This document shows positions 11,080 through 46,166 of a DNA stretch of 64,000 nt, piece by piece. The DNA lies in the NCBI GenBank assembly GCA_964106915.2, contig OZ066919.1. The stretch is one strand, 5' to 3'. Made by a program: the position numbers and the translations under genes. The first letter of the stretch is position 1. Every line of letters begins with the position of its first letter. The notes under the pieces were generated by a model. It had not been told where the DNA came from, made no database searches, and saw only the letters and a list, made by a program, of their open reading frames with translations. The DNA comes from Podarcis gaigeae. Lineage: Eukaryota.

Positions 11080-11389
11080 ATGAGCAGATTGCTGGTGGGA
11101 GTGACCCTGGAGAGGATCTGCAAAGCTGTGCTGCTCTTATGTTTACTGCACTTCCTCATCATCATGATCCTCTACTTTGATGTCTACGCCCAGCGTCTGG
11201 ACTTTTTCAGCCGCTTCAATATGCGCAACTCCTCCCGCACTCTGCCCTACGTCAACGTCTCTCGGCCTAACGGGACTGCCGGGCCTCTGGGCCCTGAGCT
11301 CCTGGCCCCGAGTGTGAAGTCCGTCAGTATGAACAGCACTGTCACCGAGAAGCCCTTACCACCTTGCCCAGAGATGCCTCCTGGCCTAG
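11080..11389 (+). CDS. B4GALT2: B4GALT2 coding exon 1 (exon starts 11013)
   Basis: Acceptor AG at 11011-11012, ATG at 11080, donor TAG|GTAAGA. Encodes the TM anchor and stem. Confidence 0.95.
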
Positions 11390-14300
11390 GTAAGATTACA
11401 GATGAGCTCTGTCTGCCTCATGCCATGTCCTACAGAAGGCCCTTTAGTGGGGAAACTGTATTGCAGTTATTGGGTTTATTTGTGCCCTGCTTGCCACCTG
11501 CTGTTTCCCTGTCAATGCAAATATGTCAAGTGGCTTTGGCCCCTGATAATAGGAGCTAGAAGATCTAGGAATCTGCAGAACAGGCATGGTATTGCAAATC
11601 ATAGGCTCCAATAGCCTCTACCATTGGAGCCAATCCTGCAGTGGAAAAACAGTTGGGAATATGTGGACAGTATTTGTTGAAAGCTGGCAAACTGAATAGT
11701 GTTTTTAGTATATTTACAGTGATCAGATAGCAGATTTTTTAATTCCTTTTTTGCCATGGCAACTCCTTGTCTCTTTCCCAGCCCCACTGTACCTAGCTGG
11801 TGCCTTTCTGCAAGTGGGCTACAAGTAATTGGGGAAAGGGCTCAGCTTCTGCACAGACACGGCTTAGTAGGGGCTACAAGGGTTAGCTCCTTCTTATGCT
11901 GATCTCTTCGAATGAATGCATGAAGTAGACCAGCTTTCACTCACCTGATGCCCTCCAGATGTATTGGACTACAACATGGCTGCTGCTGCTGAAACTTGTA
12001 GCACAAAAACATCAGGAGAGCAATTGATTGGTGAAGACCAAAGTAGACCATCTCCTCACCCTAGGGGGTAAAACATTTAAGGCATAGAGAACTTAATACC
12101 CTTATTCCTGACAGGTGGATAAAGAGTTGAAGCACAAGCTTTGGTATTGATATTTAACTGGGGCGGCTAAAACTTTTATTAAACAATGCAATCTGCAACG
12201 AGCAACAACCTTTCCTGTTAACTCTGAATCACTTAGCTGGGTATTCAAGTTAACTCTGCTTTGACTGATTGCTGTCTCTATGCTTGATACATGTTTCGGT
12301 ATTTAGGTTTCTTCGCTGATTTTTTTCTGGGCAGTGCGCCACCAACTTGGCTGGTGAAAGGGACATGAGCTGTTTGTGTAAGTCAAGAGGCTGTGGCTGA
12401 TGCATAGATAATGGAGTCCTTTCTCCTGCAGTGGGCCGGCTCCTTATCGAGTTCAGCACTCCCATGAGCATGGAGCGGGTGCAACGGGAAAACCCAGATG
12501 TGCGGGAGGGCGGCAAGTATTCTCCCCCAGACTGTGTGCCTCGCCAGAAGGTGGCCATCCTCATTCCGTTCCGGCACCGGGAGCACCACCTCAAGTACTG
12601 GCTGCACTACCTGCACCCGATTCTACGGCGCCAGAAGGTGTCTTACGGCATCTATATAATTAACCAGGTGCGTAGAGAATGATAATGTGAAGCAGTGGTG
12701 CAGTTGGGTCATTGAGTATTCTGGACTGAATGGTCTCATGGGCATCCCCTTCAGATGGTAATGTGCATTACTTCAAAATACGGTATTCCAGCCCTGCTGT
12801 GCTCCGAAGCAGAAGGAGTAGAGCCTGGATATCTGACCCAACGCTCTGTCCTAATGGCACCACTGATGTGGAAGAGAGCAAGATGGTTGGGTTTAGAACA
12901 TAGTGCCATCTGGTTCCCTTGAGAGGAACCTGATTAGGGAAAGTGGTATGTTAGTTTTCATGAATATATGCCTCTCTGTTCTGAGTGGAAGCAAAGGCTT
13001 CCTGCTTTGTGGGGGAAGTTGAGTGTGGGCCTTACAATGCACCATGAACTTTGCACCTATGGTAAGTGTGGAATGTGATGTAGATGCTTCTCACTTGCTT
13101 CTTGTTTAAGAAAAAATCAGGCCTGCTCTCTGACATGACGATAAACCTGAAATACAGTTGATGGGACTTTGCAAGATCTATAAAGGGAGATATAACAGTT
13201 CTAGAAAAAAATAAGAAAAATAGGAGAATGTTATTCACAATGAAATGTAACAAGCGAGAGGTCAGCCAGATGCATCAGGTAAGAGTAAAAGGGTTTGTGG
13301 CAGTTGATGTGATCCTGTCCTTCATTATCTTTCCGTACAGTTTGGTGAAGACACCTTTAACCGAGCTAAGCTGTTGAATGTGGGCTTCCTAGAAGCCCTT
13401 CGAGATGATGAGAGCTATGACTGCTTCATCTTCAGCGATGTTGACCTGGTGCCCATGGATGACCGGAATCTCTATCGCTGTTATGACCAACCCCGGCACT
13501 TTGCTGTTGCCATGGATAAGTTTGGCTTCCGGTGAGTTTGTGCACTTTGATCTTTTTTGAAATGCCAGTGGCCCCTTGAAAATGTTCAGAGTGTCAGAAG
13601 CAAAATTGAAGGAGGAATATATGACTTTATTGCACACATAACTTATTGGCTCTCATTCTGTGTGGCTTGGACATTGTGGGGACCTGCAAGCTGTGAAATG
13701 TGTTTCTTAACTAGATTGCAGTACAGGAACCTCCCCCATTCTTAAGACTACCATGTCACATTTCTTCATAATTTGCAGGGGTTTTGTACTTAAAAGTGGG
13801 GATATACAACGGCTTTGGATGAATCCCAAGCCAAAGCAGGGTGCTTTGCAGGGATTCTGGGATTGTCTGAGACAAAGTGGAACCTCTTCAAGGATCCAGA
13901 GACAAAGTGGGGAGTTCCCAAAGTGCCTCATGGCACCGTGACAACTCTGACAATTGTCTGCTGAAAGCAAAACTAATGTAGCTAACCTTAGTGTATAAGG
14001 AAAACACAAGGGGTGTGGAACGGCAGAAGTAGAACAAATGCCATGGTAAGGGGGGCGGGATTCTGCTGTGATGTGACTGACAGATCAAGCTTGTAACCAG
14101 AGGGAATGAGTTCACCTGGAGTCTTCAACCCCAGTGCTTTGTGAGGAGGAAAGGAAATCCACTTTAGTTCTGTCCCCTGCCTCCCAAGATCAACTTTAAA
14201 AGCCCCTAGTTCACAAAAGTTGAACCAATTTGTCTGCCATTGGCAAGTTTCATACCTAGGGAAACCTCTTTTGTGTCTGGTTTCCAAACAATTGCCCTCA

Positions 14301-17146
14301 AAAGACATGGGAAGTTTAAGTGGACACTTTTTACCCATCCCCAAACTGTGAAGGCTGTCCTTGTGGGAAAACCAATGATACTATCATTCAGAAATTTGAC
14401 AGGATCCATCTTTCTTGGAGACTCTGATGCCTGCAAATTTCATCCAATAGTGGGGGAGGGGGGAAAGTTTCCTTAGAAAAATAACCATAAAATTTCAAAG
14501 GTACCTGACAGAAAAAAGCCCCACCCTGGAACTATTTGGCTGGCTGAATCCGCTGTGGAGCGGCAAATGTGCCTGCAAATTTTATCCACTGTAAAAAGGG
14601 GGAAAGGTATAGCTTAAAAAACAACAACAACCCAATAGTGAACGAGGGGAAATGAAATCTTGTTTTTTCCCAACTCAGACTCAGAAGCACTTGGGACTGA
14701 GGCATGTTGTTTTCTGAAGTACTGACTCAAGGTCCAAACTGAATCTTGTTTGGTGTACATCCCTGATTTAAACTTTGCTGCCTCTTATATGACTAGATGA
14801 AATGCTCCAGGGAAGTCCTTGTGATACTACATTATGGAATAGGCGCTTGCAAAACCTATATGAAGGTGATGTAAACAAGCAGACAGGATCCCCACGTGAA
14901 TGTTCTGTGTTGCCTATATTCTCTTACCTGCCAAACATGGCAAAAGGAGATGGAGGAGGTACAGTGTGTATAAAATGGAACCCTGCATTCCAGCTAAGGA
15001 GAAGGGAAATGGGAAGGATTTAGGAGAGACCTGATGCAGTGGGAGCAATGGGTGACATCACATGGCTGATTTGGAAACTGGGATTTAGACTGTGTCAGGT
15101 GTAGCTTGGACCACCCAGGTTCTGTGCTCCTGAACCCATTCGTGGCTTGACTGATTCCCATCTCTCCTGCTTGTCCTCTGCAGGCTGCCATACTCTGGCT
15201 ACTTCGGAGGTGTCTCTGGCCTGAGCAAGACACAGTTTCTGAAGATCAATGGCTTCCCTAACGAGTACTGGGGCTGGGGTGGGGAAGATGACGACATCTT
15301 TAACCGGTGCGTGAGAGGCTGGGCCAAGCCTAGCCAGAACTTGTTCTCTGCAAGTTGGTTGTAGTAGCCATGTAGTCTGTTTTTCCGTGTGGTGTCTCCT
15401 GGGAATGTGCTGAGTGGCAGGGAACAGCATTCTCTTCTGGGGTGGGGTAGCTGTGCAAATGGCAGGTGGCAATATGCAACACCTGCTTTTCCTATAACAA
15501 TGCTCCCAAATCTGAGAGAGGAGGACATAGGCAGGTAGGTATTCCACAGCACATAACAGGCAGGGCCAAATAGAAGGCCTGGGGAGCCAATACTCTGAAA
15601 GCCAGAAGGGGTTGGGTGTGCTGAGGACTGGAGGGTGAGGACTAACTCCAGCTTTATTTAGAGTTTGCCCCCAACCTGTCTGCTGGTCTTTGAGCTGCAC
15701 TTTTTCTTTACACAGGATCTCGCTTAATGGCATGAAAGTGTCACGTCCTGATGCCCGCATTGGGCGCTACCGCATGATCAAACACGAGCGTGACCGACAC
15801 AACGAGCCCAATCCCCAGCGGTGAGAGAGACAATGTGCTTGCTAGCTCCCTACCTAGTCCATTGCGAGCTACATAAGGAGATAGAAAGCTCCCACAAAAT
15901 TTCTGCACCATTTCCCTGGGCACATAATGGCTTTCAAGCCTGATTTCCAATGGAATATAATCTTCCAGACATATCTTCCCTTTTGTAGCATACTACTCTA
16001 CACCTCGTGAGGAGAGAGGGGCCACATTTGTTTGCCTCCCTGTAGAATGTCCATGAAACAAACCAAGATAGCCTACAAGTCCTTAGACTTCCCCCAGAGA
16101 GTGTTTTCTATTACTGCATGTGCATTCCTCTCTTTCTGATCTACCCCCAGTTTTAATTCCACTCTCTGCCTCTTCTAAGAGACACAGACATGAATCAGAG
16201 TCCCAACCATGCACCAGGTGTGTTTGGTTAAATCTATGTTCTGCTAGTTCTAGGCAAGGAAAGAGAAAGGGACTCCTGTCCTGTGCCCTAACATTTATTG
16301 TCTGGAACCAGAGAAAAGCCACAGCTGGCATGGTTTCAAGGCAATACACTAAACCTTATTTCATGAGACCCTGACATTCCACTTGAGAAGGTTGTGTGGT
16401 GGTAGTAATCACCTATCATGAGAACTAAATGCAGTCACCATCCATGGCCCTCCAGGATCCTATGACACCATCACACTTTGCAACCTTGCTATATCATTTG
16501 ACAGGGACTGTTGTTTTACAGCTGAGCTCTGGGTGGAGAAGCTCACTCTGTTACTTGGGACTTTCAACCTGGAAGGGCTGTGCATGGTGATTGTCCGTTC
16601 ATGTGTTCAGAAAACACAATTTCATTTCGGAAGTCCCAGTGCTTTGTATGCTAGAAATCTGACATAATAAATTGCTTTATTGTGCGTGGATAATGCCACG
16701 TAAGGCTCTTCCCAAAATCCTTCCAAGTGGCCTGAGCTGTCATTAGACTCTCTATTCCAGGCTTCCTCAAACTCAGCCCTACAGATGTTATTGGCCTACA
16801 ACTCCCATGATCCCTAGCTAGCAGGACCAGAGGTCAGGGATGATGGGAATTGTAGTCTCAAAACATCTGGAGGGCCGAGGTTGAGGAAGCCTGCTCTATT
16901 CCATTCATCAAGGAATGGCTTGTAGGTTTAACTTGAATTAATCTAACTGCCTACTTTCATGTGTAAGATGAGTTTTTCTCTGGTTTTCCTGGCAGGTTCA
17001 CCAAAATCCAGAATACCAAGGTGACCATGAAACGCGATGGCATTGGCTCGCTTCAGTACCGCCTGGTGGAGGTGGTTCGTCGTCCCATGTACACCAATGT
17101 AACCGTGGAGATTGGCCGCCCACCACCACGCCCCCCTCGGGGCTGA
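11080..17146 (+). CDS. B4GALT2: Beta-1,4-galactosyltransferase 2, full CDS join(11080-11389,12432-12667,13341-13531,15184-15306,15716-15820,16996-17146), 371 aa
   Basis: N-terminus MSRLLVGVTLERICKAVLLLCLLHFL is the B4GALT2 type II anchor. GT7 motifs KVAILIPFRHR, FNRAKLLNVGF, FSDVD and WGWGGEDDD are present. All introns are GT-AG with consistent phases, and the CDS is 1116 nt. Confidence 0.97.
12432..12667 (+). CDS. B4GALT2: B4GALT2 coding exon 2
   Basis: ctcctgcag|TG...CAG|gtgcgt. Encodes GRLLIEF...KVAILIPFRHREHHLKYWLHYLHPIL...YIINQ. Confidence 0.95.
13341..13531 (+). CDS. B4GALT2: B4GALT2 coding exon 3
   Basis: tacag|TTT...CG|gtgagt. Encodes FGEDTFNRAKLLNVGF...FSDVDLVPMDDRN. Confidence 0.95.
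15184..15306 (+). CDS. B4GALT2: B4GALT2 coding exon 4
   Basis: ctgcag|G...CG|gtgcgt. Encodes LPYSGYFGGVSGLS...NEYWGWGGEDDDIFNR. Confidence 0.95.
15716..15820 (+). CDS. B4GALT2: B4GALT2 coding exon 5
   Basis: cacag|G...CG|gtgaga. Encodes ISLNGMKVSRPDARIGRYRMIKHERDRHNEPNPQR. Confidence 0.95.
16758..16893. mobile_element. Short non-autonomous hAT-type MITE (136 bp, apparently young copy)
   Basis: TIR caggcttcctcaa / ttgaggaagcctg, perfect 8-bp TSD ctctattc (16750-16757 and 16894-16901), extensive internal palindrome. Confidence 0.9.
16996..17146 (+). CDS. B4GALT2: B4GALT2 last coding exon
   Basis: ggcag|G TTC. Encodes FTKIQNTKVTMKRDGIGSL...GRPPPRPPRG followed by TGA. Confidence 0.95.
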
Positions 17147-18521
17147 CTCTTTGCTGCCTGGCTCTGCCCATGGCCCCATGCATGAGGAGCTGTGCGGATC
17201 CCAGCCCTGACTGGTTCAGAGGACTGTGTCCTGGCTTGGAGGAGCTGTCTGCCTCCTTTGTGGGGATGCGGGAAAGGCCAAGACTACACCTTCGCCTTGC
17301 CCCAGCCTTTGGCTGAAGCCCATCTCCTGATCACTAGTCAGTTCTCCACAGTGCCCTTCACAGGTTGGGGAGGAAGTGTGAGTGTGTCATGGTGCCTGGC
17401 GCAGCGCTTAGGGGTCCTGGGCACAGCCAAGCCCCACTCCTGGCTGGAAGGCACTGAGAGCAGAGAAACCTTGTGCAGGTTCTTGAACCTCCCTATCCTC
17501 TCCCAGAACTTTTCACAGAGCGGCATCCCTTAAGGATCCCGGAAGTACAGTACAGGTAGTTGTTTTCCTTTCCTCTCAGTGTGCAAGAGTGCCGTTTGAG
17601 CCTTCCTTCCAGGGGGTGGCCTGGCCTTACGACAAATGCCAGCTCGCAAGGTGTCCAGGTGGTTCACTCGTGCCCAGCTGAGGAGAAGCTCTTCCAAAGG
17701 AGAAGCTCTCATGGGCCTGGCCACTGCCCACCTCCATTCATGGCTTGGTGCTGTCCCCCTGCTGGGCCCTGGGTGTCACTTCTGGCTCCAGTAACAGGGG
17801 CATTTTATACAAAACCCTCATTAGAATACTTGAGTGCTTCCTGGGTTAGTGTGACAGGTAGCCTGTCTGTCAAGGGACAACAGGTCATTCTTCCTAACAG
17901 TGTTTGCTCTTTTGTCTGTGAATGGGGAATATTGGTTGGGCAGTGTGTGCTTCACTTCTCAGCAAGGGTGGAATCAAAATGGCATGGTTCGGCCTACTCT
18001 CTGGTGTGGGCTGGCTTCTCTTTTTTACAGGCACCAATGGACCTATGGCCATGGCTACAGAACAGAGGAAGGTGAAGTTGGCTTCTTGCTGCCTGTCCCC
18101 TACCTCTCACCTCCAACCCACTTACCCCATACCAACCCTCACTCACCAATCAACCTTCCCGCCATCTGCCAGGCAACCTGCCGTTGACCACTCATCGTGC
18201 CCTCTTTGTCAAGCTGCCATCTGCCACCACCTGAGGCCAGGCCCCTGGGTCCGACCGTCTGCTCATGACACATGGTGGCCGTGTGCCTAATTCCTGGAGC
18301 TAGGAAGCTGCTGGTGTCCCTCATCTCTGGTTATGGTGCCTGGCAGGTAGAATCTCCTGCGCCGGTCTACTTTGGGATGGCAGCTGGGCCAGGCTTGAAG
18401 CCAGGCACCAGCGTGTTGCGCAGCCCAGGTGTTGGTGACTTTTGTACATTTGAATGTTTTGATCCCTTTTCAAGCCTATGGTGAATGCAGCACTGGTCAC
18501 TACGATCAGACTTTTGTATTC

Positions 18522-18527
18522 AATAAA
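18522..18527 (+). terminator. B4GALT2: Probable B4GALT2 poly(A) signal AATAAA
   Basis: Canonical hexamer about 1.4 kb after the stop, preceded by TTTTGTA/TGTA elements. Confidence 0.7.
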
Positions 18528-18802: not shown

Positions 18803-18808
18803 TTTATT
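18803..18808 (-). terminator. Probable poly(A) signal of the VWC-domain gene
   Basis: TTTATT on + (AATAAA on -), about 460 nt downstream of the stop at 19264. Confidence 0.6.
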
Positions 18809-19263: not shown

Positions 19264-19448
19264 TCAGGTGTGATGTGCACCTGTAGCCCGGCATCCCCGT
19301 AGCCGCTCGCATTTAGCTAAGCGGTTTCCTTCCCAGTAACCGGCGTCCTGGCCATCATGACAGCGGCAACGGGTGCAGGGCCCCACCCATATGCTCTCCC
19401 CAGCAGGAATTACGCGTCGCTGGCTCCCATCCACGTAGCAGTTGGGCC
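19264..19448 (-). CDS. VWC-family gene coding exon 3
   Basis: ctccacag|GG. Encodes PNCYVDGSQRRVIPAGESIWVGPCTRCRCHDG...CERLRGCRATGAHHT followed by TGA. Confidence 0.92.
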
Positions 19449-22400
19449 CTGTGGAGAGACATGCCCATGTATTAGAGTCTGCCATTGTTTGCAGAAGTCT
19501 CATCATGACTCTTAGAAGCAGAAATGGCAAGCAGTTTAAGAGTACAAGGTGGGGGCAACCCAGCCAGATGGGCAGGGTATAAATAATAAAATTATAATTA
19601 TTATTACTCCAGCCTTGCACCCCTATCCTCTACCGGGAGCTCACCTAGTGCCTGTTCGTCCACAGGTTCTGTGCTACAGGCTGCTTTTGTACCAGGAGGA
19701 CATTTTTCATTTTGGGGAGAGCCCCTCTTCTAACACTAGGGCCAAACACCTGCCAAATCCTTCAAGATGAGGTGGGGGCTACCAGGTGTCCCACCATTAT
19801 TTCTAAGTAGGAGGCTTCCTGTTCAGTTAAGCAACCTTGTGTCTGGTCAGCTTGGCCCAATTCCTCTCACTTCCCTGCTCTAGTAGGACAGGGGCCCTGA
19901 ACAGCGAGGGAGACAAAGTTCTCTCTCCCTTCTGGACAGCTTGAAGTGGAACATTTGTCCCTTGCTGTGAAGGTGTGTCTTTCTCACCGTCCTCACAGGT
20001 GGGGCAGCAGTGGCCCTTCTCGTAGACTGGATTGACGCAGGGCGGAGGGGCGCAGTCTGCCACTAGGCAACGAGCGATGCCATCTAGGTCACAGGTACAC
20101 TGCTCACACTCTGAGGGCTGTGAGAGACAAATATTGGTCAATAGAGCAAGGCAGCTTTACGTGGACAGCACACGGTTATGATGATGCAGCTCCAGAACTA
20201 TTTTGCATCAGTGGTGCAGAAGCTTATTCTTTTCTGAGAATTGCATTCCCTTGGGAATCTCTTCAGAATTGCATGCCAGTGGTGTGCTGGTCCAGAGTCA
20301 AAGTGGCTAGAGCACCTCCTCTGCCACCCTATTTCCCTCCCCCTTTTCCTCCTAATCAAATTAGGCTGAGAGAAATAGGTTACCAATCCACCCCGCACCA
20401 CCATGTTGCAGAACTGACTGGATTTTGCGGTTCCAGAATAAATTAGTCATGTCTTCTGTCTGTAATTTGCAAAGAGATGTGTGTATGCAAGCAGGTGGGA
20501 AACTCATGCCTCAGATTAGGCTCCTGGCTGCATCTTTGCTTGCCTGTATCTGTGCTTTAAGTATCACAAAAGAAATATAAGGCCCATCATCTTCCTTTTT
20601 TTGTAATGTGTGAAGCATTCCAAATTGAATGCATAGCCATGGCAGTACTGGGATTATACCATCAGATGGCACTATCAACCAAAAATTGATAGGAGGGAGA
20701 AAAAGCTTCTGTCCCAATCTCCCTTGACTTTGTGTATCTTCAAAACAAAAAAAAAATCCTTCCAGTAGCACCTTAAAGACCAACTAAGTCAGTTCTTGGT
20801 ATGAGCTTTCGTGTGCATGCACACTTCTTCAGATACACTGAAACAGAAGTTTCCAGACCCTTCTATATAGTGAGAAGTTGGGGAGGGGTATTACTCAGAA
20901 GGCTGGTGGGAATGGGTGATTGGCAGATAGCTGTGATGAGCCTGTTGACGACTCTTAACGACTGCAATAGGTCTTACAGGAAGAAGCAAGGGGTGAAAAG
21001 GTGAAAAATGGCTTTGTCATGTATAATGAGATAAGAATCCAAGGTCTTTGTTCAGGCCAGGTTTCTCCATTGTTTTAAGTTTGGTGATAAGTTGTAATTC
21101 AGCAGCTTCTCTTTCCAGTCTATCTGTGTATCTTGTCAGCTCTGGCCAACTCAAGATTACTCTCAAATAATCATGCAGCTGGCCACTGGGGAAACTGACT
21201 GGTCATAAGAAAATGTTGAATAGAGAAAACTGTGAGTGAGTGAGAGATTGTCCCCAGTAGCACAAAACCATCAGGGATCCCAATATGCTAAAAAGGCCCA
21301 TGAATGTGTTTTGGAACCCATTACCCAATCAAGCTCCTCCTTAAAATATCCAGCAAAGGAGACTGAAGTCATTTTCAGCACCTCACCTCTCATTCGCCTT
21401 CTCACTAGCAAAACATGAGGCTAATTCTAGCCAAGCCACATGCTTTTGTTCTCTGCCCTAAGGGGAAAGTTCCAAGATTCTACCTTCTGTTAAATTCCCT
21501 CCCTCCTGAACTAATAGGTTGGTTGTCTGATTTCACACCTTCAGGGTGGGTGATGATAAAGACTGGTCTCCACTGAAGTTCAAGTGGTTGCAGATAAAAA
21601 CATTGGTCACTTGCTCTAGATCACTCGTCACAATACTTTAAAATAACAAAGCTGGAAGATGACATCAACATTTAACACCAAAAATCATATCTTAATGATA
21701 TAATTGTCCATGATCATCTTTATAACTCGAGGGAAAGAGATTGCACAACTTCACTGGCAAGTTGATATCCTGTTCTTTCTACAAACTTACAGTACAAAGG
21801 AAAGTGTTTACCCTTCCTAATTACAGAACTTTTCTCTCTCTAGATCTATAGCACTTGTCTTGCTTATAAGCAAATGCAAGATAACCTAGTTCCAGGAAGT
21901 GTTGGGAAGCAGCCCTATATTACTGTATCCACAACCCAGATGTTCTGGACCTAGAGCAAAATCTGGCCATCCCTAGTAAAGAACTGAGAAGCTTTAGCTG
22001 AGCAAAGTATTTTAGGGCAAGTTAGGCCCCAGCTGAATGGTTCTGGATAATCCAAAGCTTGTTTGCTATTTTATGATATTTTGGTTGGCCATAATAAAGT
22101 TATTGTTTTGGGGGAAATTATGGCTCAATATTGCTTTGCAGAAAGCATTTACTTTCTGTGTACCTTTCAATAGAATTTTGTGTTTGGGTAAATGGGACAG
22201 GCCAAGAGATAAGTCATCAAACAGACACACAATAATTTGGTGTTTAGGTAACGGACAATTCACCTAGGAAGAACCCCACTGCCCATTCTTTGACTATATG
22301 TAGCAACTGGTCCTTTCTTCATCAATACACTTAATCAATACACATTTTTTGCAAACACTCAATTCATGCTATCCAAAGAGGCATGGAGCCCAGGAATGGA

Positions 22401-23396
22401 GGGCTTTGATCTTCCACCTGCAGCCTCAGGGCCAGAATTTGAATCCCTTCGGCTAGTGCAGGCTTAGTGCCAAAAATACTCCTTTCCGAACCCACCCTCA
22501 ATTGTCTAAGTCAGCCATGCTAGAGATTGTTTGGTCTGACTCAAGTCCTAAAATAAACTACACACATTTTTGGCAGCAACAGACAATAGCCAGAAGCAAG
22601 GTCTGAACAGGTCAATGTCAGGCCTAAGAAATGGATGAAAATGAAATTCAATTAGTCAAAGGATGCTCAGCTAGGTACTACAGCCAATAAAATTGCCTTC
22701 TGAATTATTGGTTTTATGGGAACATCTTAAGAGCACCTACAGCTTCATAGAGCACTTTTGATTTGGTGCTTCTCACCCCTTTTGGAAAAATGCAATTTAT
22801 TAGTTTTGTTTGTATTTTCTTTTGCTTCAGCCAGTAATGAACAAACTATAAAGACACAGCGTTCCTGCTTCCAGTCTCTTACTCTCCTGCCTAGGCCTCC
22901 CTTTCAGAACAAGATTTAAGAAACAGAAGGGACTGCTTGAGATTCTTTTTCAGGAGTGTTCGCTTTTTCTCCTCACTTTGCCCATCCATCACCTATTCAT
23001 CCCTGCCCACCTCGCTCTAGATTCCTTCTCATGCCACCCCTTTGCCTAATTCTCCCTTGAATGCCTTACCTGGAAATGCTGCCCCAGCTCATACACTTGT
23101 CCACGGTGCTCACAGCCAACCCTTTCGCAGCGTGGGCAGCAGTCGCTGGGGTAGTGGCTGACGTGAATGCAGGCAGGTGGCAGAGCGGTGCAGTCCGTGC
23201 GGGCGCAGGCGGGCCCCTCCGCTGTGCACTCGCACTGGGTGCAGTGGTCACTGTCCAGGAAATACCACTCCCCAACATAGTACAGGCTCCCGTTGGCATC
23301 GCACGTGGTCACTGGCCCTGCCAGTCCTGGGACGGGCACCAGAGTCAGCAGCAGCAGCAGCAGCGCTAAGCTCAGCTGTGTCAACGGAAAGGGCAT
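19264..23396 (-). CDS. Secreted VWC-domain protein of the Brorin (VWC2/VWC2L) family, complement join(23396-23070,20117-19988,19448-19264), 213 aa (223 aa if ATG 23426 is used)
   Basis: Leu-rich signal peptide, two 10-Cys VWC modules (CxxCxC...CCxxC) and a 6-Cys C-terminal module. Family-typical segments CLVADCAPPPCVNPVYE, CCPTCEDGPNC and IPAG are present. Both introns are GT-AG with phases 0 and 1, and there are no stops or frameshifts. Confidence 0.92.
19550..19606 (+). repeat. LINE-type 3' tail remnant
   Basis: acccagccagatgggcagggtataaataat followed by a (tta)n-like tail; the same motif occurs at about 24540. Confidence 0.6.
19988..20117 (-). CDS. VWC-family gene coding exon 2
   Basis: ctctcacag|CCC. 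Encodes PSECEQCTCDLDGIARCLVADCAPPPCVNPVYEKGHCCPTCED. Donor G|gtgaga. Confidence 0.93.
20745..21122 (-). mobile_element. Penelope-like retroelement 3' fragment (GIY-YIG C-terminus plus terminal repeat)
   Basis: The - strand translates RLEREAAELQLITKLKTMEKPGLNKDLGFLSHYT* (stop 21017-21019), typical of the end of a PLE ORF. It is followed by a hammerhead-bearing terminal region. Confidence 0.85.
20799..20836 (-). ncRNA. Minimal type I hammerhead ribozyme motif (PLE-associated)
   Basis: The - strand reads GUAU CUGAAGA A GUGUGCAUGCACAC GAAA GC UC AUAC. This gives stem I GUAU/AUAC, the CUGAnGA and GAAA cores, a stem II hairpin, a palindromic AGCU stem III and a UC cleavage site. Confidence 0.8.
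23070..23396 (-). CDS. VWC-family gene coding exon 1 (signal peptide, VWC module 1, start of module 2)
   Basis: Encodes MPFPLTQLSLALLLLLLTLVPVPGLAGPVTTCDANG...CCPRCERVGCEHRGQVYELGQHFQ. Donor CAG|gtaagg. Confidence 0.92.
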
Positions 23397-23429
23397 CGCT
23401 GAACTCGAGGGACAGATGCCGGGCATGGG

Positions 23430-24360
23430 AGTTGGCGAGAGGGAGGAGCAGAGCAGCAGCAGTAGGGAAGCGAAGCGGAGGAGAGCTGGCGGGGAAAGTG
23501 GGCATCCAGTCCGCTCCAATGCCGCCCGCGGGGTCCCGCCGGGAGGTTGCCTGCTGAAGCTGCAGCTAAGAACCGCCCTGGCGTGCCTCGGCCTTTGTGC
23601 AGCCGCCGCCCGGCCCGGTCCGCCCCTTCTTGCAACCCGAGCCCGCCCAGGGGCACAACACCCCCTCCGCAACGGAGCGGGCGGGACCGGGGCGGTGGGA
23701 GGGACCTGGCCCCCTATCTGCACCTCAGGAAAAGCCTACTAAGACAAGTCCACTGTGCTCCCTCTCCAAACCCCTCGAACACTTATCCGGGGAGCCAATG
23801 CTGCGTCTCCCCAGTTCCCAGTCTCCGCGGCCTCCAAAACACGCGCGGCGCTGGATCTCTCTCTCCCCCCTTATTCCTAGGAACATTAACGGGCATTGGG
23901 CAAAGAAAGAAGTTTCTCAATACTGTACTGTTGCTAAAGCAAAAGGCCAGTGGGACCCCTTCCGGATGAAAACTGGCCGACGTGTGGCTGCTCTTTACCT
24001 CCGATTGCTTGGGTGCAAGCGCGGGCGCACCAAGAGCTTCAACGCACACGCTTCCTTCCCCCGGGACCCCCGTCTCCACGCTCGACCGACATCCTGTCTG
24101 CCTCGTGGGCACGGCTCCTTTAAGAGGCGAGGCTTCAGAGGAACGCGGCGGGGCGTTTCCATGGAGACGGCGAGTTTATATTCCAGAGAGTTAGAGGGTG
24201 GAGGGGGCTCGGATAGGGCAAGACGCCTGGCCCTCCGCCCCTCCGCCGCAGGTGAGGGCTACCGCAGAGTTATGTCCGTGGGTCCGTAGTGAGAGAGGAA
24301 GTGTGGGGAGAGTAAAAGGTCTGGGGCGGAAGTGGGCTCGGTGGGCCGAGACGTAGGTGA
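23430..24360. promoter_or_regulatory. Bidirectional CpG-island promoter between the VWC-family gene (-) and CCDC24 (+); probable CCDC24 non-coding exon 1 ending at 24251
   Basis: CpG-rich block between divergent genes, with GC boxes, an X-box at 24155-24168, donor CAG|GTGAGG at 24252, and GGGGCGGAAGTG at about 24323. Confidence 0.7.
24155..24168. promoter_or_regulatory. RFX X-box GTTTCCATGGAGAC
   Basis: One mismatch from the palindromic GTTTCCATGGAAAC X-box, located in the proximal promoter of CCDC24. Confidence 0.65.
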
Positions 24361-24484
24361 GTTAAGCACTGGGGAGCAACTATGGGGAGGGATAATGGCC
24401 AATAGGTTACATTTGGGGCTATAAACAACTACCTGACATTCAGAAGACATCTGAAGGCAGTCCTGTTCAGGGAAGTTTTTAATG

Positions 24485-24605
24485 TGTGACATTTTAATGT
24501 ATTTTTAATCTTTGTTGGAAGCCGCCCAGAGTGGCTGGGGAAACCCAGCCAGATGGGCGGGGTACAAATAAATAATAATAATATAATAATAATAGTAATA
24601 ATTAC
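24485..24605 (+). repeat. 5'-truncated LINE 3' end with (AAT)n tail
   Basis: ggaagccgcccagagtggctggggaaacccagccagatgggcggggtacaaataaataataat. A second copy in the window lies at about 19550. Confidence 0.65.
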
Positions 24606-25615
24606 GATTAACGGGAATTAGTATGACTCTCGAGGTTAATGTGAGGGGATGAGTTTGGTATATGGAGAGCAAGAAAAATCATATGCTCTTATTCTCTGGT
24701 GGCCCACGTGGGAGAAAGGTGAGTGCAAGTAACATGATTTGTAGACAGTAGTGCAACTCAGGGGGAAAGTACAGAGCACCACAAAAATGGGGTGCCTCAA
24801 ATGGCCATCTAGAGAGTGTCAGGTGATGGAGTCAGGAACAAACGACCTGTGGCAGCACCTGGGCTGGCATGGGCATGTTGTAGTCTATTGGCGCTGATGG
24901 TAGTCACAGCGGCATCCTTGTTTTCTACAACAGTTTTAGTCAGAGGGTGGTTAGCCAGGCATGTACATGCCACTCAATTCAATTTTTTACTTTTATTTTC
25001 ATCCTTGGTGCTCCCCCCCCAAAATAAACGTGTTTAACTTCAGGGCAGCAGAAGCAAATTCCATTGTATTCCTGTAATGCTAGTGCTATGACTTAAGTGA
25101 GTTTAGAATGTGAAACTGTACATGCTCAGAGTATTTCACAACCATTTATCTATTGTGCTAATGTATCAGGAATGTAGGAGCAGTTATAAAACATGGGAAT
25201 GGCTTAACTGACAACTGACAAATGTAATATGTGTGGCTGTCTAATGGGAGAGGGGTGTAAAACCATGGATGTGGCCAGGATTTTAGTTGGGGAGGGACAA
25301 AGTTGTTGAGCTTTTCTTGGGAAATCATGGATGAAAATACCTCATAAATAGGACATTGCGGGGGGGCAGGCTTCTGTTGGGGGGGCAGAACCTCAGATAA
25401 TTGAATACTTTCAATGGTTTTCAATAATATTTGTGAATCTTGGGAGGACAGCAGCCCATGTGTAAAACCATTAAGTTCAGTGTCTAAAATTACCTAGGTG
25501 CACCACTGCATGTTGCACCAAGTAGTTGTGATGTGGAGCTCCTACTCACTGTCTCATTGGCACAATCTTTTTTTCCTTTAAAGCCTCATTTATCGTGGAA
25601 TCGGATACAGCACCC

Positions 25616-25771
25616 ATGTTGCCCTTGCCTGGTGCATCTGGGGAATCCTTGCAGTCCGTACCATCACTCTGGACAATGGTAGAGGAACAATTAGCACCCA
25701 GTGAGAGGCTTGAGGCGAAAGCTATCTTGGGTCATGGCCTTGTGGAACGGAGCTTGGAACTTCATGCTGAG
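25616..25771 (+). CDS. CCDC24: CCDC24 coding exon 1 (exon starts about 25584)
   Basis: Polypyrimidine tract with AAG acceptor. Encodes MLPLPG...SLELHAE. Donor GAG|gttaag. Confidence 0.85.
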
Positions 25772-28700
25772 GTTAAGTACCAAAATACTGGATCTCCTAT
25801 TCAAAATGATTCACAAAAGAGCAGAACAAACAAACCACCTCTTACTACACAATTTAGAAGTGGCTGGTGACAAAGGGATATCTGAATAAAGCATCAAATC
25901 TAGGTCTCATCAGCTAAAGAGGCAGCACTAATTTTGTAAGGGGATTTGACTGATGAAAGGGCCCACCTTTCATGTCTATATATTGAGTGGAGTGGACAGT
26001 GCTAAAATTGAGTGGAGCTAAGAGAGGGCTTATAAATTGTATTAAGCCCCCTTCCACTGAGCAATGGCCACTAGTTTTGGCATACATGCAATTTCATATA
26101 AAGTAGCATTCATGTGTATGATAATCTTGTATGGAGAAAACCTCTGGTTTGCCACTTACATCTGCTTTGAGTGCTGTTTAATTTAAGTGAAAGGGAAGCA
26201 TATCTGAGAAGGCAAGTCAAGGAGGGGATAAAATATTGCAACCACCCCCTCCCTGTTTGACAAGGTCCCCATTTGCCAGCTCCCAGCTCAGCTGGTTCCT
26301 AATGCTTGGCCAGAGCCCCTAATCCATGCTATTCCAGGCCCTTTGTTCTCCTCCAGCCATTCATGCCCTTTCTTTATTCAGCATGGTCCTGACTGCAGCT
26401 GAGAAGAACAGTAAACATCCCAGAGGCTTTTCACATGGTAATTGCCTTACCTCCTCTTGAAACCAGAAGAGCAAGCACAGCACACCCTGACAAGATGGCA
26501 CCTTTTTCACTCTATCACTTCTTCATGTTAAAGCTTTGCTTGAGATCCAGCCCCCCCATTGTGATTAGTGACCCCTCCCCAGCCTTTATGGGGTCTCTCC
26601 CTCTTCATCACAAGCCTGATAAATGTAGCTCAGGTACTGCCTGTCTCCCTGCTGTGTTCTTGTATGTGTCTCTGCTCCCCTCCCCAATTGGATATCTGAG
26701 AGGCCGCCCAGGGAAGCAGCTGTACCATAACGTTCCTCTTGTGGATGTGTGGGGCCAGAAAGGGAGTTCTGGCGCTTGCCTGCCTTACAAATATCCTGCA
26801 GATATTTTTGCGGCATGACCTTGACTTTCCTCATGGGGGGAGGGAGAGAATGATTGTGGGTGGGCTGTCTGCAGCTTTGCACCTTTTATGGAGTGTACAG
26901 ACGGCAACAAAGTAGTGCCCTCTTGCCAGCTACATTGGAATGACAGTGTCCTGGCTGGTGATCTTATCTTCTGCAGGCAACTTTGCCCACTTTCTGCAAA
27001 AGAGTTCTTTTTTTTAAACCTAAAAACTTGACTCTTAATCCTAAAACACACTTCACATAAACTAATAGCCTCATAGTCTGTTCCCAGTCTTTGGGGAGAT
27101 GCAACGTTTTACTGAATTCAGTGTGCTCTCTCACACATTTATCACATTTGCGGCATCTTTTATTTCCTTGATGCATGACATACCTCCAAAAAGTTGTCAG
27201 TTCCCTGACTGTGGCCTTTATGAAATGTAATTGTCTACCATCAGGTGAGTAATTAACCCTTGGCTAGGTATTGGTTTTCTTTTCTTGCAGGCAGGCACCT
27301 GGCTTGATTTCCAGATGTGCAGAATAGCAATACTGGGAATGGGAGTGCAACTTGTATTTTTAGGTTGTGTCAGTGCTTCATCATTTGGGGAGGTGGAGGG
27401 TGGGGGAAAGATTACTTTGAGAAAGTTACTGCAGTTTGTGTCAGTGTGCACATGTGTGAATTTCTGCATGTGGCAATGCACTGTCCCTAATGCAGTCCAA
27501 CCCCTTCCCTATTTACAGGTGCGGACACTGTTGGAATTACATCAGGAGTTGCAGTCAGGCCGCCTTGGAGTGGAGCAAAGCCCACTGCAAGCGGATGACA
27601 GCTGGGCCTTGCTGGCAGCTCCCCCCAACCTCAAGGAGCTGGTGAGGGAGGAGATCCGCCTTCTTCTAATTGGCCTACAGCAGAAGGCATCGCAGGAGGG
27701 CAGGTACTGGAGATTGGAAGAGAAGGGACTTGAGAGAATTAAGGGCTGAGTTGAGGGGGAGCAGGTAGTAGGGATAGAAGAAAAGCAAGCAGAATATCTT
27801 AGGACCTGAAGCCTATTTGATAAAAAAATGAGCCCATTAGTTTCCAACTGATGTGGCTGGTGGTATTTATGTGTGCGGAATGGGTGAGTTTTATATCATC
27901 TTTTGGCCAAAGCAGTCTAGATTGAGGAAGCCATAACTATTTGTTATGAGAGGCTTAGAGTTTCATGGGACAAACCAGTTAGGAGGCTAGACAATAACCT
28001 GATTGTCTCTCTTAACAAGAACAGGATGAGGGAAACCTCTGATTCCACTCAGATATAAATAAGTCCAGTGCCACCTAGTGACTAAACTATATATTTACAC
28101 TATTGACACAGTATTCTTTCTCCCTTTGCCTTCTAAGGGTGACTGTTCCAGAAATGCTTACTAGGAAATATCAGCTCCAATGCAATTTAATTGGCAGTTC
28201 CAGTATAGTTTCAACATGATTGCCGCTCAGATGGCCAATGTCCAGCAAAAATAACCTGTACCAAACATATGTTTGCACCACACACCTCCATCTGTAACTT
28301 GCGCTCCCATTCAAGTGTAGCTTGTCAGTTTGTGTGCCTCTCTAGTCTTTTTTATCTGTAGAATTAATTCCAGCCTTACATTCCCATTCTTTGGGTCTCA
28401 ATCACATAACCTTTGTCATTCCCACTTAGCTCCCTTACATCATGCAGGAATTGCATTGCTGAGCGCCTCTATCAAGAATGCCAGTCCTGCTAGTGCGTTT
28501 GTTTTTTATGGTGTGTTCAGTCCATAGCCTGAGGCTGGGATTATGTCCCACCTCCAAAGTGAGCATTCATCCAAGTGAGCACTGGGATCAGCACCTGCTG
28601 GAACCCTTGCCTGAGGATTTGCTCCCTGCCTTAGCCCTGTGTAACCAATGAATAGCTCAGTGAAGGCACGGATTAGAACAGGCTGGCTAGTAAGGGATGA

Positions 28701-31700
28701 GCTCTCAAACTCCTCATGCTGGAGTTGTTTGTACCATGTTGCCATATCGGAGAATCCCTTCACACCCTTTAAACCTTTCTACTATCTCTCAGTCACAACC
28801 TGAAATTCTGCATTTGTTACTTACTTTCAAATAGCTCCCCTCTTGTTGAATTGACATGAGCACAGGTCATGGCTCCCTGTGTTCTGCCTAGAACTGGGTG
28901 GTCCAATAAATGGCCTGAGGGCTGCATGTAGCCCTCAAGGCCTGTTTTGTTGGCACAGGGCAACATTTGACACCCTCCCCAGCCCTCATGCTGCCTTCCC
29001 AAAGCCAGATAAGCAAGGCACTAGGCTTAGCGAAGGAGGTGTAAAGGACCTGGCAGGGTCCTAAAGTCCTCCTGTCTCCTACCCAAAGCCTAATTACTGC
29101 TTCTCTGGAGTGCTCTAGGACCCTCCCAAAGCCTGTTGTCTCACTTAGCTGGCTTTGGGAAGGCAGGGCAAGGACTGGGGGGTGGCATCAAATTTTTGCC
29201 TCAGTCTCCCCACTGCACAATACAGTATGTGTTCTGTTGGTTCTGTGTCAAACTACTTTTGTGGTCTACCTTGGTATGGAAAAATGGACCTCACTGGGCT
29301 CTTTAGTCCAGCTTGTTTTTCCTTTTAGGCTTCTATTCATTCCAGCTACTGGGTGGTTTTGTGACCCAGCACTGCCACCAACTGGTCTTCTCTTGTCCTT
29401 GTCAGCCCAAAGACTGGGGATGAACAAGACTTATAGCTGTATGTTTTCTGCTTCACAGGAACCAAGATTGTGCCATCGCTAAATACAGCCCTCATGTGGT
29501 CACCTTTGCACTGAAGGCAAATGCTGGCAATAGTCAGTCTTCATCTGGGAGCAGTGCCCTAATCAGGTAAGACTGAAGGAAGCTGCAGCCTCCACACAAT
29601 GAGCTTCTGGGCTGTGACTTGTTCTTACCCGGAACACCATGAACTGTATCACCACAGGAGGTCTCAGAATCCAGGACTGATTTTGTCTGTAGGAAGCCTA
29701 ACACCACAGAGTGCCATATGCCATAGACTTAGAAACCTAGCAGCAATAGGTTCTTTTTGCATTTATGGGCAGTTTGGGGCTGATCACTATTATCCCATTT
29801 GATCCTTATACAAGTTCCAGGAGCGGGGTCTTGCAATGAGTTGGCCTCCCTGCTGGTTTCAGTCCCATTGTGGCATTAATCTAGAAATGTGTTTGTATTA
29901 TTTATATAGAAATGCATATTATGCATATGTAGAATTAGCAGTGGTGTGCCCACTTAAATTATAAGTCTCCATTTTGGATAGAACCTTAATGTTAAGTCAG
30001 AGAGGCTGTGAAATTACAAACTCAGCCAGCAAAGATGGGGCAATATCAATGGGGTGGGGTGGGGAGACTCACTGAGCAAGCAGAAATCTTTGTGCAGGGC
30101 TTCCACTGACAGAGATGTAGGTGAATCCCACCCCTAGTATGTTTTCCTTTTATATCTAGTTGAAGAAACCAAGAGCAGGTTGGTATGCGGAGGTACAGTC
30201 TCTCAAACATCTTGGTGAGGTTCCTGGGCATATCAGCTCCAGTTTCTGTGGTGTTAAGTACCACCTGTAGGTGAATTTCAGAATGAGTTCCCTTCTTTTG
30301 GCTGATATGGACTTAAAGGGAGGTATAGACCACATTCTAGTCCATTGGGTGGGGTTAATTTCATAGCCTATATCATGCTCCCATTGTTCTTTGATTGCAT
30401 CAGTGTTGTGGGGATTTACTTTAGTTTGTTTTGGAGAAATGGGTGTGCTGTTGTGGGGATGTTTTCGATGGTATCCCCATGAATTTTTGTTCCTCTGCAG
30501 TTATGGTTGGCATGGTCAGCCCTGTTAGGAATCTTCTGATTTCCTGTTCAGGTGGGTTGCGGGAAGTGTATAGGTTGGCATAAAATTCTGAGGTTATTTC
30601 TTTGGTGGTGGATGTTAATGCAACCGTCTTTTATAGTGACACAGTATATACTTGTTTTGAGTGATTCCCCCCCCCCCCCCGCATCTGTTTGCTAATAGTC
30701 TGGAGTTCTTCCCTTCATATTCGTAAAAGCATTGTTTAGGGTATAGGATGTTAATCATTGTTTTTTGTTCTATGAATTTAAGGAGGTTTTTTTGGCTCCT
30801 GTTTGTTTGTAGTGTGATGACAAGGTTGAAATGTCTTGTTCTAATTTACCAATTTTTGAGGAAGTTTGTTTTTTAAGGGATCTCCTCTCCTTTTATGTAA
30901 GCTCCTCTGATGACCACTTGCATTGTGTTCCAGAGAAGGGGGGTTGCAATGTCGTCTACATCGTTGTCCTTAAAGTAGTTTTGGAGAGTTTTCAAGAGAC
31001 TCTCTAGGTAGTTCGTTTGTGGTTAGGATGGGGCTGAAGGACCATGATTGGGTAGTTTATGCTTCCTCTCCTGTTAGAAGGGTTGCTTCTACTGGGGCAT
31101 GGTCTGTGATTTTAATGTTCTGTGTCTTAGTCCTAAGAAGCATGCTAGTTCGGTTTGATGAATCCCTGTCCTGTGACAGCCATACAGAGAGGATGGGAGT
31201 ACAACTCATTGAAAGAGACTAGGCGTCCTGGAAAGAAAATGACTGACATCCCCAACCAAATTCTGTTACCTGATCCTTGTGTCAGTGTCCCATTCAAGCT
31301 TTGTTTAGTGCAGGAATGCCCAGTTGCAGGCATCAAGCCTGTCTGGTCACAGGAAAATGCAAGTCTCATCCAATTTCTGTTTCCTTAGGCCATTATTCTC
31401 CAGAACCGCTAATCTGGAATCCTTCTGTAATAAACTGAATATTGCCCATATCAGTGAGGTAGCCTCTCAACTTCGGTAAGTTTTTGCTCTATTAGGTTTT
31501 TTATTTGCACAAATATTGTAAGAGGGAAGAAGGCACAAGAGGGTTACAGGTATCCGTTGCAGGTGTCTGGAAGGCAGATATAACAGAAGACCTTGTGTCT
31601 GAGAACAGTAAACTCACTGCAGAGACAGAAGGGAAGCTGGGGATGGCATTGTGTGAAAATGTGTGCAGATGGACCCAAGCAGCTTGTATTCTACCTTCTA

Positions 31701-37522: not shown

Positions 37523-46166
<8,644 letters not shown>

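What the first reader, a model, noticed from the sequence alone, without database searches (positions are those of the whole stretch)
19264..23426. Intact, unnamed third Brorin/VWC2-family gene between B4GALT2 and CCDC24
Seen: three exons splice into an uninterrupted 213-223 aa protein with a signal peptide, an NGS sequon, two complete 10-Cys VWC modules and a 6-Cys tail, plus its own CpG promoter and AATAAA. Known: VWC2 (Brorin) and VWC2L (Brorin-like) are secreted neural BMP antagonists that are also found in AMPA-receptor complexes. They share the VADC..P.CVNP.YE...CCP.C..GPNC...IPAG pattern, but in mammals they lie near IKZF1 and IKZF2. To my knowledge human B4GALT2 and CCDC24 are adjacent, with no VWC gene between them. 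Inference: this is a separate paralogue, neither VWC2 nor VWC2L, retained in reptiles and lost in the human lineage. It would be a functionally uncharacterised extracellular BMP/TGF-beta modulator. Module 1 has a canonical CxxCxC (CTQCEC), whereas I recall a shorter CxCxC spacing in VWC2/VWC2L, and the tail carries an insertion (QDAGYWEGNRL).
Basis: partly seen in the sequence, partly recalled or inferred. Interest (0 to 1): 0.85.

Follow-up and report, generated by a model that had tools for sequence, protein, structure and literature searches.

The report
Ancestral-type Brorin paralogue (zgc:113531)
This wall-lizard gene encodes a small secreted relative of the BMP-blocking protein Brorin. 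It is annotated in databases but apparently unstudied, has stayed next to the same neighbouring gene since lampreys, and seems to have been lost separately in mammals and in the crocodile-bird line.

Summary
In detail: three exons (357/130/185 nt, GT-AG introns) give an intact 223-aa secreted protein with two 10-Cys VWC modules and a 6-Cys tail. It is not unknown. The mature protein is 100% identical to RefSeq Podarcis muralis XP_028589577.2 (confusingly named 'VWC domain-containing protein 2-like'), and it is the orthologue of zebrafish zgc:113531 (NP_001013504.2). It is neither VWC2 nor VWC2L (AU p=0.002 and 0.006), nor merely 'third': VWC2, VWC2L and si:dkey-283b1.7 form one derived clade, and this gene is a separate, slow-evolving lineage. 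It sits tail-to-tail with B4GALT in lamprey, pike, turtle and lizard (dN/dS 0.07-0.12), and spliced transcripts exist for orthologues. Its cysteine spacing matches the Ciona gene exactly over both modules, so it keeps the ancestral form. It is absent from gap-free intervals in echidna, parrot and crocodile, which implies at least two losses. Most likely role: extracellular BMP-family ligand trap acting through module 1, which resembles Crossveinless-2 VWC1 (inferred, untested). No paper on it was found, and the scan had no other note on this gene.

The parts
23070..23426 (-). Coding exon 1: leader and signal peptide, VWC module 1 (C42-C100) and the start of module 2
   Evidence: donor GTAAGG follows 23070
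23319..23396 (-). Predicted signal peptide (about residues 11-36). ATG 23396 has a purine at -3 and matches the 210-213 aa orthologues; ATG 23426 is the RefSeq start
   Evidence: (sequence, Kozak context); cleavage site inferred by eye, no predictor run
23127..23303 (-). VWC module 1, Cys spacing 19,2,1,6,4,6,9,0,2, with an NGS sequon at 23294-23286; closest solved relative is Crossveinless-2 VWC1
19988..20117 (-). Coding exon 2 (130 nt, phase 0 to 1): rest of VWC module 2
   Evidence: exon is also 130 nt in turtle, pike and lamprey
19264..19448 (-). Coding exon 3: GPNC tail with 6 Cys (VWC2L_C) and the TGA stop
18803..18808 (-). Putative poly(A) signal AATAAA, about 280 nt from the B4GALT2 poly(A) signal (18522-18527, +); tail-to-tail
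23251..24500 (.). CpG island between this gene and CCDC24 (head-to-head; likely bidirectional promoter)
24117..24179 (+). Conserved promoter element with an RFX X-box-like motif, also in turtle and crocodile; used as the right-hand marker of the interval
   Evidence: blastn to turtle L003, 78% over 63 nt; crocodile L007 about 14655-14701; the X-box label is from memory
11080..18527 (+). Neighbour B4GALT2 (coding exons 11080-17143, 3' end 18527), tail-to-tail
25607..34171 (+). Neighbour CCDC24 (exon matches at 25607-25773, 27603-27707, 29454-29513 and about 34100), head-to-head

Best explanation
This is the wall-lizard orthologue of zebrafish zgc:113531, the slow-evolving, ancestral-type branch of the Brorin family. 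It split from the VWC2/VWC2L/si:dkey-283b1.7 branch before lampreys and jawed vertebrates parted (shown). It stayed next to B4GALT2, and it was lost from that interval in mammals and in crocodile and birds (shown for echidna, parrot and crocodile). Mechanism (inferred): the signal peptide routes it to secretion as an N-glycosylated, disulphide-rich, acidic protein of about 188 aa. VWC module 1 starts right after the signal peptide, as in Crossveinless-2, and binds a BMP-family ligand dimer through its N-terminal segment and first beta-subdomain. That masks receptor sites and damps SMAD1/5 signalling locally, as Brorin and Brorin-like do. Confidence is about 0.95 for identity, about 0.8 for two independent losses, and 0.55 for the BMP-trap mechanism.
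For: Identity: mature protein 100% identical to P. muralis, P. raffonei and P. lilfordi proteins; zebrafish NP_001013504.2 and UniRef 'Zgc:113531' fall in the same family clusters. Paralogy: the V clade has 100/99 support on a 1.2-1.8 substitutions/site stem. AU tests reject Z+VWC2L (p=0.006) and Z+VWC2 (p=0.002). Sea lamprey, white shark and stingray each carry both kinds. Synteny: pike, turtle, lamprey. Selection: dN/dS 0.12, 0.08 and 0.07 versus turtle, pike and lamprey. Spliced RNA of orthologues: a 1566-nt Logan contig translates to the full protein, and full-length Logan proteins come from short contigs in the gecko (1.0 kb) and lamprey (1.9 kb) clusters. Function: zebrafish and mouse Brorin inhibit BMP signalling (PMC5407822). 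The only PDB sequence hits are CV2 VWC1, E=3e-4, on module 1. The model (pLDDT 88) matches the BMP-binding VWC domains of collagen 2A (Z 6.6, rmsd 3.1, 64 aa) and CV2 (Z 4.5, rmsd 4.5, 61 aa). The position of CV2 Ile21 is Leu in 80 of 102 orthologues, and fish keep a clip-like V-A-G-Q-E-N-T-C (CV2 determinants from PMC6270503).
Against: No binding or expression data exist for this branch. VWC folds often do not bind BMP: only 1 of 5 CV2 VWC domains does, and CCN3 vWC does not (PMC6270503, PMC10326224), yet CCN3 scores Z 5.4 on the model. The CV2 Ile27 position is Thr or Ser. The clip Gly sits at the CV2 position in only 48 of 102 orthologues, and lizards have Pro where T5P weakens CV2 binding. 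The lizard clip may be cut off with the signal peptide. The protein is only about 40% identical to the Brorins whose activity is known. No reads from this species could be examined. The position of Ciona relative to the duplication is unresolved (44/0).
Confidence: 0.55

Rival explanations
1. It is a TGF-beta-family modulator but not a plain BMP antagonist: it prefers activin/GDF ligands, or it binds Chordin-type antagonists and so promotes BMP signalling, as CV2 can.
For: CV2/BMPER acts both ways and binds Chordin through VWC domains (PMC8377005; PMC2944808). The CV2 BMP2 epitope is only half conserved. Activin inhibition by VWC2 is recalled from memory, not checked.
Against: Both tested family members inhibit BMP (PMC6502786; PMC5407822).
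Confidence: 0.17
2. Its main role is as a secreted synaptic or neural matrix component, for example in AMPA-receptor/Noelin complexes, like Brorin and Brorin-like.
For: Brorin and brorin-like co-purify with AMPA receptors (PMC6502786). Extreme conservation from lamprey to lizard (75% of the mature chain) suggests a fixed protein partner.
Against: It lacks the acidic N-terminal extension and the DYRGK motif shared by the whole V clade. The Ciona-type architecture predates the vertebrate synapse proteome (inference). No expression data were available.
Confidence: 0.13
3. It is a secreted VWC protein with a partner outside the TGF-beta family (a receptor ectodomain or matrix protein), as in NELL2-ROS1 or CCN proteins.
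For: The best Foldseek hits are the tandem VWC region of NEL/NELL2 (E=1e-6). Many VWC domains do not bind BMP.
Against: Those hits reflect tandem VWC geometry only (rmsd 10-18). The family architecture and tail are Brorin-specific.
Confidence: 0.13
4. It is a translocated VWC2 or VWC2L, or a decaying pseudogene.
For: NCBI names these proteins 'VWC domain-containing protein 2-like', and the intron positions are the same.
Against: AU tests; both kinds occur in the same genomes; zebrafish brorin is linked to ikzf1 (PMC5407822); dN/dS is about 0.1; spliced transcripts exist.
Confidence: 0.02

Closest known systems
zgc:113531 (zebrafish NP_001013504.2, LOC541359) and RefSeq 'VWC domain-containing protein 2-like' LOC models such as P. 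muralis XP_028589577.2
   Same: It is this gene: same clade, same Cys spacing, same B4GALT/CCDC24 neighbourhood in a teleost (pike); mature chain 100% identical to the Podarcis models.
   Different: Nothing substantive; the leader has two more Leu than P. muralis. No paper on the gene was found.
VWC2 (Brorin) and VWC2L (Brorin-like)
   Same: Signal peptide, two 10-Cys VWC modules and a GPNC 6-Cys tail; two introns; identical module-2 spacing; about 35-43% identity.
   Different: They have CxCxC and spacing 20,1,1,6,4,6,7,0,2,6, an acidic N-terminal extension ending in DYRGK, and an IKZF-linked locus (shown for brorin in PMC5407822). This gene has 19,2,1,6,4,6,9,0,2,4, no extension, a sequon in module 1, and sits by B4GALT2.
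si:dkey-283b1.7 (fish, bichir and shark paralogue)
   Same: Another unstudied Brorin-family paralogue.
   Different: It nests in the V clade as sister to VWC2 (96/92), has the derived spacing and has lost two tail cysteines.
Ciona VWC2-like gene (XP_078487850.1)
   Same: Identical Cys spacing over modules 1-2 and the same two intron positions. Its neighbours are PPIH, POMGNT1 and a DUF5578 gene, which from memory map to human 1p34 around B4GALT2.
   Different: 36-37% identity, a longer N-terminal region and no adjacent B4GALT within 10 kb; the tree does not resolve whether it is the orthologue of this branch alone or of both.
Crossveinless-2/BMPER VWC1 (PDB 3BK3, 2MBK)
   Same: VWC directly after the signal peptide; best PDB sequence hit to module 1; Ile21 position kept as Leu; clip-like segment in fishes.
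   Different: CV2 has five VWC plus VWD/TIL domains; here the Ile27 position is Thr and the clip is variable.

Membership tests
Brorin/VWC2 family (Chordin-type VWC proteins) | Secretion signal | tested here: met
   Hydrophobic leader at about residues 11-36, conserved across orthologues; judged by inspection, no predictor run
Brorin/VWC2 family (Chordin-type VWC proteins) | Two 10-Cys VWC modules plus the family-specific C-terminal Cys domain | tested here: met
   (PF23333, PF23334 and PF23331 above cut-off)
Brorin/VWC2 family (Chordin-type VWC proteins) | Coding region split by two introns at conserved positions | tested here: met
   Same junctions in lizard, turtle, pike, lamprey and Ciona; two introns in brorin per PMC5407822
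Brorin/VWC2 family (Chordin-type VWC proteins) | BMP antagonism | not testable with these tools
   Only indirect: CV2 epitope partly conserved
Brorin/VWC2 family (Chordin-type VWC proteins) | Mainly neural expression; AMPA-receptor association | not testable with these tools
VWC2 orthologues | Groups with VWC2; CxCxC spacing; DYRGK motif; IKZF1 linkage | tested here: not met
   AU p=0.002; spacing and motif differ; neighbours are B4GALT2 and CCDC24
VWC2L orthologues | Groups with VWC2L; CxCxC spacing; DYRGK motif | tested here: not met
   AU p=0.006
zgc:113531 orthologue group | One clade with zebrafish zgc:113531 | tested here: met
   88/94 support, 86% of bootstrap trees; 70-79% identity to fish, amphibian, shark and lamprey members
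zgc:113531 orthologue group | Conserved position next to B4GALT(2) and CCDC24 | tested here: met
   Pike, turtle, lamprey (B4GALT only); the zebrafish locus itself was not fetched
CV2-type BMP-binding VWC | N-terminal clip (Ile2, Gly4, Thr5) plus hydrophobic patch Ile21/Ile27 | tested here: inconclusive
   Leu at the Ile21 position in 80/102, Thr or Ser at Ile27, Gly at -5 in 48/102, Pro at -4 in squamates

The most novel reading that the evidence does not exclude
This overlooked gene is the positional and structural heir of the single pre-vertebrate Brorin gene. It stays on the ancestral chromosome segment and keeps the ancestral module-1 surface, while VWC2, VWC2L and si:dkey-283b1.7 descend from a diverged duplicate that moved to the IKZF-linked segment before the genome duplications. 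It would be a BMP-family modulator conserved at 75% identity for over 500 million years and then dropped independently by mammals and archosaurs, with turtles showing a remodelled module 1.
Probability: 0.5. Interest if true: 0.6.

Novelty: new member of a known kind. Interest (0 to 1): 0.42.

Why it matters
BMP regulators shape neural and skeletal development, and their inventory is drawn mostly from mouse and human, which lack this gene. A highly conserved secreted family member in lamprey, fishes, amphibians, turtles and lepidosaurs is hidden under the same database name as VWC2L, so it is likely mis-assigned in transcriptome studies of these animals. It can be tested directly in zebrafish (zgc:113531). 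Comparing it with Brorin would show what the remodelled module 1 of VWC2/VWC2L gained, and the two losses give a natural experiment. It is still a paralogue of a known family that annotation pipelines already call, not a new kind of system.

Tried and rejected
After that call I sent no window letters from that stretch to any search tool. Later searches used tool-returned protein ids, one of which (P0135, P. muralis) has the same mature sequence, and local scripts. The spliced model was searched exon by exon by reference; the joined search was left out, and the joined CDS was used only locally for translation, identity and dN/dS. No human contig was fetched or compared; statements on human 1p34 are from memory, and a paper search to confirm them found nothing. 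N gaps in the crocodile and tinamou loci were left unfilled; tinamou (2.5 kb gap) is inconclusive. The alligator look-up found no record; the shark and wombat loci came without DNA. In the trees, P0220 was truncated by my trimming; one search is the corrected tree. The ESM Atlas did not identify the taxon of P0220. Paper searches for zgc:113531 or its gene id, and for family evolution, found nothing relevant; most subscription papers are not covered. Rejected: translocated VWC2/VWC2L, pseudogene, 'third member', and 'loss only in the human lineage'.
Full report
Observation. They join into an unbroken 223-codon frame with 27 cysteines, a hydrophobic leader and one NGS sequon. A second ATG at 23396 gives 213 aa, has the better Kozak context and matches the 210-213 aa orthologues. 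Each exon hits a Brorin-family Pfam model above its curated cut-off. An AATAAA lies at 18808, about 280 nt from the B4GALT2 poly(A) signal on the other strand. The CpG island at 23251-24500 lies between this gene and CCDC24, head-to-head, so it is probably shared.

Identity. An exon-1 search returned 67 relatives at mostly 60-98% identity from squamates, turtles, amphibians, lungfish, gar, teleosts and sharks. [quoted passage not shown] The same clusters hold zebrafish NP_001013504.2 (LOC541359) and UniRef entries named Zgc:113531, plus tuatara and lamprey proteins. Lamprey is about 75% identical over the mature chain. I found no paper on the gene in the searchable library.

It is a live gene. 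Exon 2 is 130 nt and the junctions are identical in turtle, pike and lamprey. Nei-Gojobori dN/dS of lizard against these is 0.12, 0.08 and 0.07, with dS near saturation, so these are rough values. A 1566-nt Logan contig encodes a complete fish orthologue without introns, and complete Logan proteins on 1.0 kb and 1.9 kb contigs occur in the gecko and lamprey clusters.

Place in the family. A profile search of cluster representatives brought in the other members: VWC2, VWC2L, si:dkey-283b1.7 with shark relatives, two further lamprey and two hagfish genes, a Ciona gene and unnamed invertebrate-type proteins. In the corrected tree, VWC2, VWC2L, dkey-283b1.7 and those four cyclostome genes form one clade (100/99) on a long stem. 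The window gene and its orthologues, including lamprey, form another (88/94). Forcing the gene with VWC2L or with VWC2 is rejected (AU p=0.006 and 0.002). Sea lamprey, white shark and stingray each hold both kinds, so this is paralogy, older than the lamprey-gnathostome split, and the gene is at least the fourth family member.

Which form is ancestral. Cysteine spacing across modules 1 and 2 is identical in this clade, Ciona and the unnamed P0220 (19,2,1,6,4,6,9,0,2,4,17...). All V-clade proteins differ at four of these intervals (20,1,1,6,4,6,7,0,2,6; one hagfish protein has 22 at the first), and more distant relatives also have CxxCxC. The Ciona gene has the same two introns. Its neighbours are PPIH and POMGNT1 (best PDB hits) and a DUF5578 gene, which I recognise as ARMH1. 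From memory, all three lie on human 1p34 around B4GALT2, which would make this locus the ancestral position; I could not confirm the map positions. The tree does not resolve where Ciona branches (44/0).

Synteny and loss. The order CCDC24 (head-to-head), gene, B4GALT (tail-to-tail) is seen in pike and turtle, and the B4GALT link in lamprey. I then read the B4GALT2 3' flank in lineages that gave no protein hit. In echidna, 2.7 kb of gap-free DNA separates B4GALT2 from CCDC24, with no remnant by tblastn or hmmsearch --max. In night parrot, B4GALT2 is followed by SLC6A9 after 3.2 kb, gap-free, with no VWC remnant and no called CCDC24. In saltwater crocodile, the B4GALT2 poly(A) signal (14154) and a conserved promoter element (about 14655) are 0.5 kb apart without gaps; in lizard and turtle the same markers enclose the whole gene over 5.6 and 4.4 kb. 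Tinamou has a 2.5 kb gap and is inconclusive. No named orthologue from a mammal, bird or crocodilian appeared, although bird and mammal-like V-clade proteins did; cluster lists are capped at 15, so this is supportive, not complete. Since turtles and lepidosaurs keep the gene, at least two losses are needed: mammals and archosaurs. Turtles have a remodelled module 1 (36/59 identical to lamprey versus 50/59 in lizard), having lost the sequon and aromatic residues; their GC3 of 0.94 may explain part of this.

Mechanism. Shown: a secreted-type architecture and two VWC folds (model pLDDT 88; best matches collagen 2A vWC Z 6.6, CCN3 Z 5.4 and CV2 VWC1 Z 4.5, all modest). Known: Brorin inhibits BMP signalling in vitro and in zebrafish (PMC5407822), and Brorin and Brorin-like also co-purify with AMPA receptors, with unknown role (PMC6502786). 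The only PDB sequence hits are CV2 VWC1, on module 1 including its N-terminal segment. CV2 binds BMP2 through a clip (Ile2, Gly4, Thr5) and a patch (Ile21, Ile27) (PMC6270503), blocking both receptor sites (PMC8377005). Here VWC1 also follows the signal peptide directly, the Ile21 position is Leu in 80 of 102 orthologues, and fishes have a clip-like segment. However, the Ile27 position is Thr and the clip varies. Many VWC domains bind no BMP (PMC10326224). I put a BMP-family ligand trap at 0.55; other TGF-beta or pro-BMP modes at 0.17; a synaptic AMPAR role at 0.13; a non-TGF-beta partner at 0.13.

Verdict. The gene is real, intact and distinct from VWC2 and VWC2L, but already annotated and named in zebrafish. 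What appears undescribed is its status as the ancestral-type branch and its separate losses in mammals and archosaurs. New member of a known kind; interest 0.42.

Noticed in passing
window 20799-20836, minus strand (intron 1): Minimal hammerhead-ribozyme-like motif (CTGAAGA, palindromic stem II, GAAA, very short stem III) in sense orientation. It is the only copy in the window. From memory it resembles the Penelope-like-element hammerheads common in lizards. The minimum-energy fold only partly gave the canonical shape; Rfam was not run.
   Followed up: partly
L004/L005 13794-17040 (night parrot): CCDC24 also appears to be missing between B4GALT2 and SLC6A9 in this bird (no called gene, no blastn match), and none is called in tinamou L008; crocodile keeps a CCDC24-like gene.
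   Followed up: partly
L003 10001-10315 (Emys) and other turtles: Turtle module 1 is strongly remodelled towards Ala/Arg/Gly/Pro, loses the N-glycan site and shifts the core charge from about -10 to +2, while module 2 and the tail stay conserved.
   Followed up: partly
window 24117-24179; L003 9371-9431; L007 14655-14701; L006 about 16270-16290: Conserved promoter element with an RFX X-box-like palindrome upstream of CCDC24, kept in species that lost the VWC gene; it suggests ciliary-type regulation of CCDC24 (inference).
   Followed up: partly
window 18441-18527; L004 14831-14919; L007 14083-14154; L003 13864-13950: A conserved 3'-UTR element just before the B4GALT2 poly(A) signal in lizard, turtle, bird and crocodile.
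   Followed up: no
L010 1-22520 (Ciona): The Ciona Brorin-family gene is flanked by PPIH, a DUF5578 (ARMH1-like) gene and POMGNT1, possibly a preserved ancestral chordate segment.
   Followed up: partly
proteins P0251, P0261, P0254/P0480, P0263 (no window coordinates): si:dkey-283b1.7 and shark relatives form another unstudied Brorin paralogue, sister to VWC2, lacking two tail cysteines.
   Followed up: partly
window about 37700-44430, minus strand: Exons of an SLC6A9-type (glycine transporter, SNF family) gene, completing the conserved order B4GALT2, VWC gene, CCDC24, SLC6A9; identified from translated frames.
   Followed up: no
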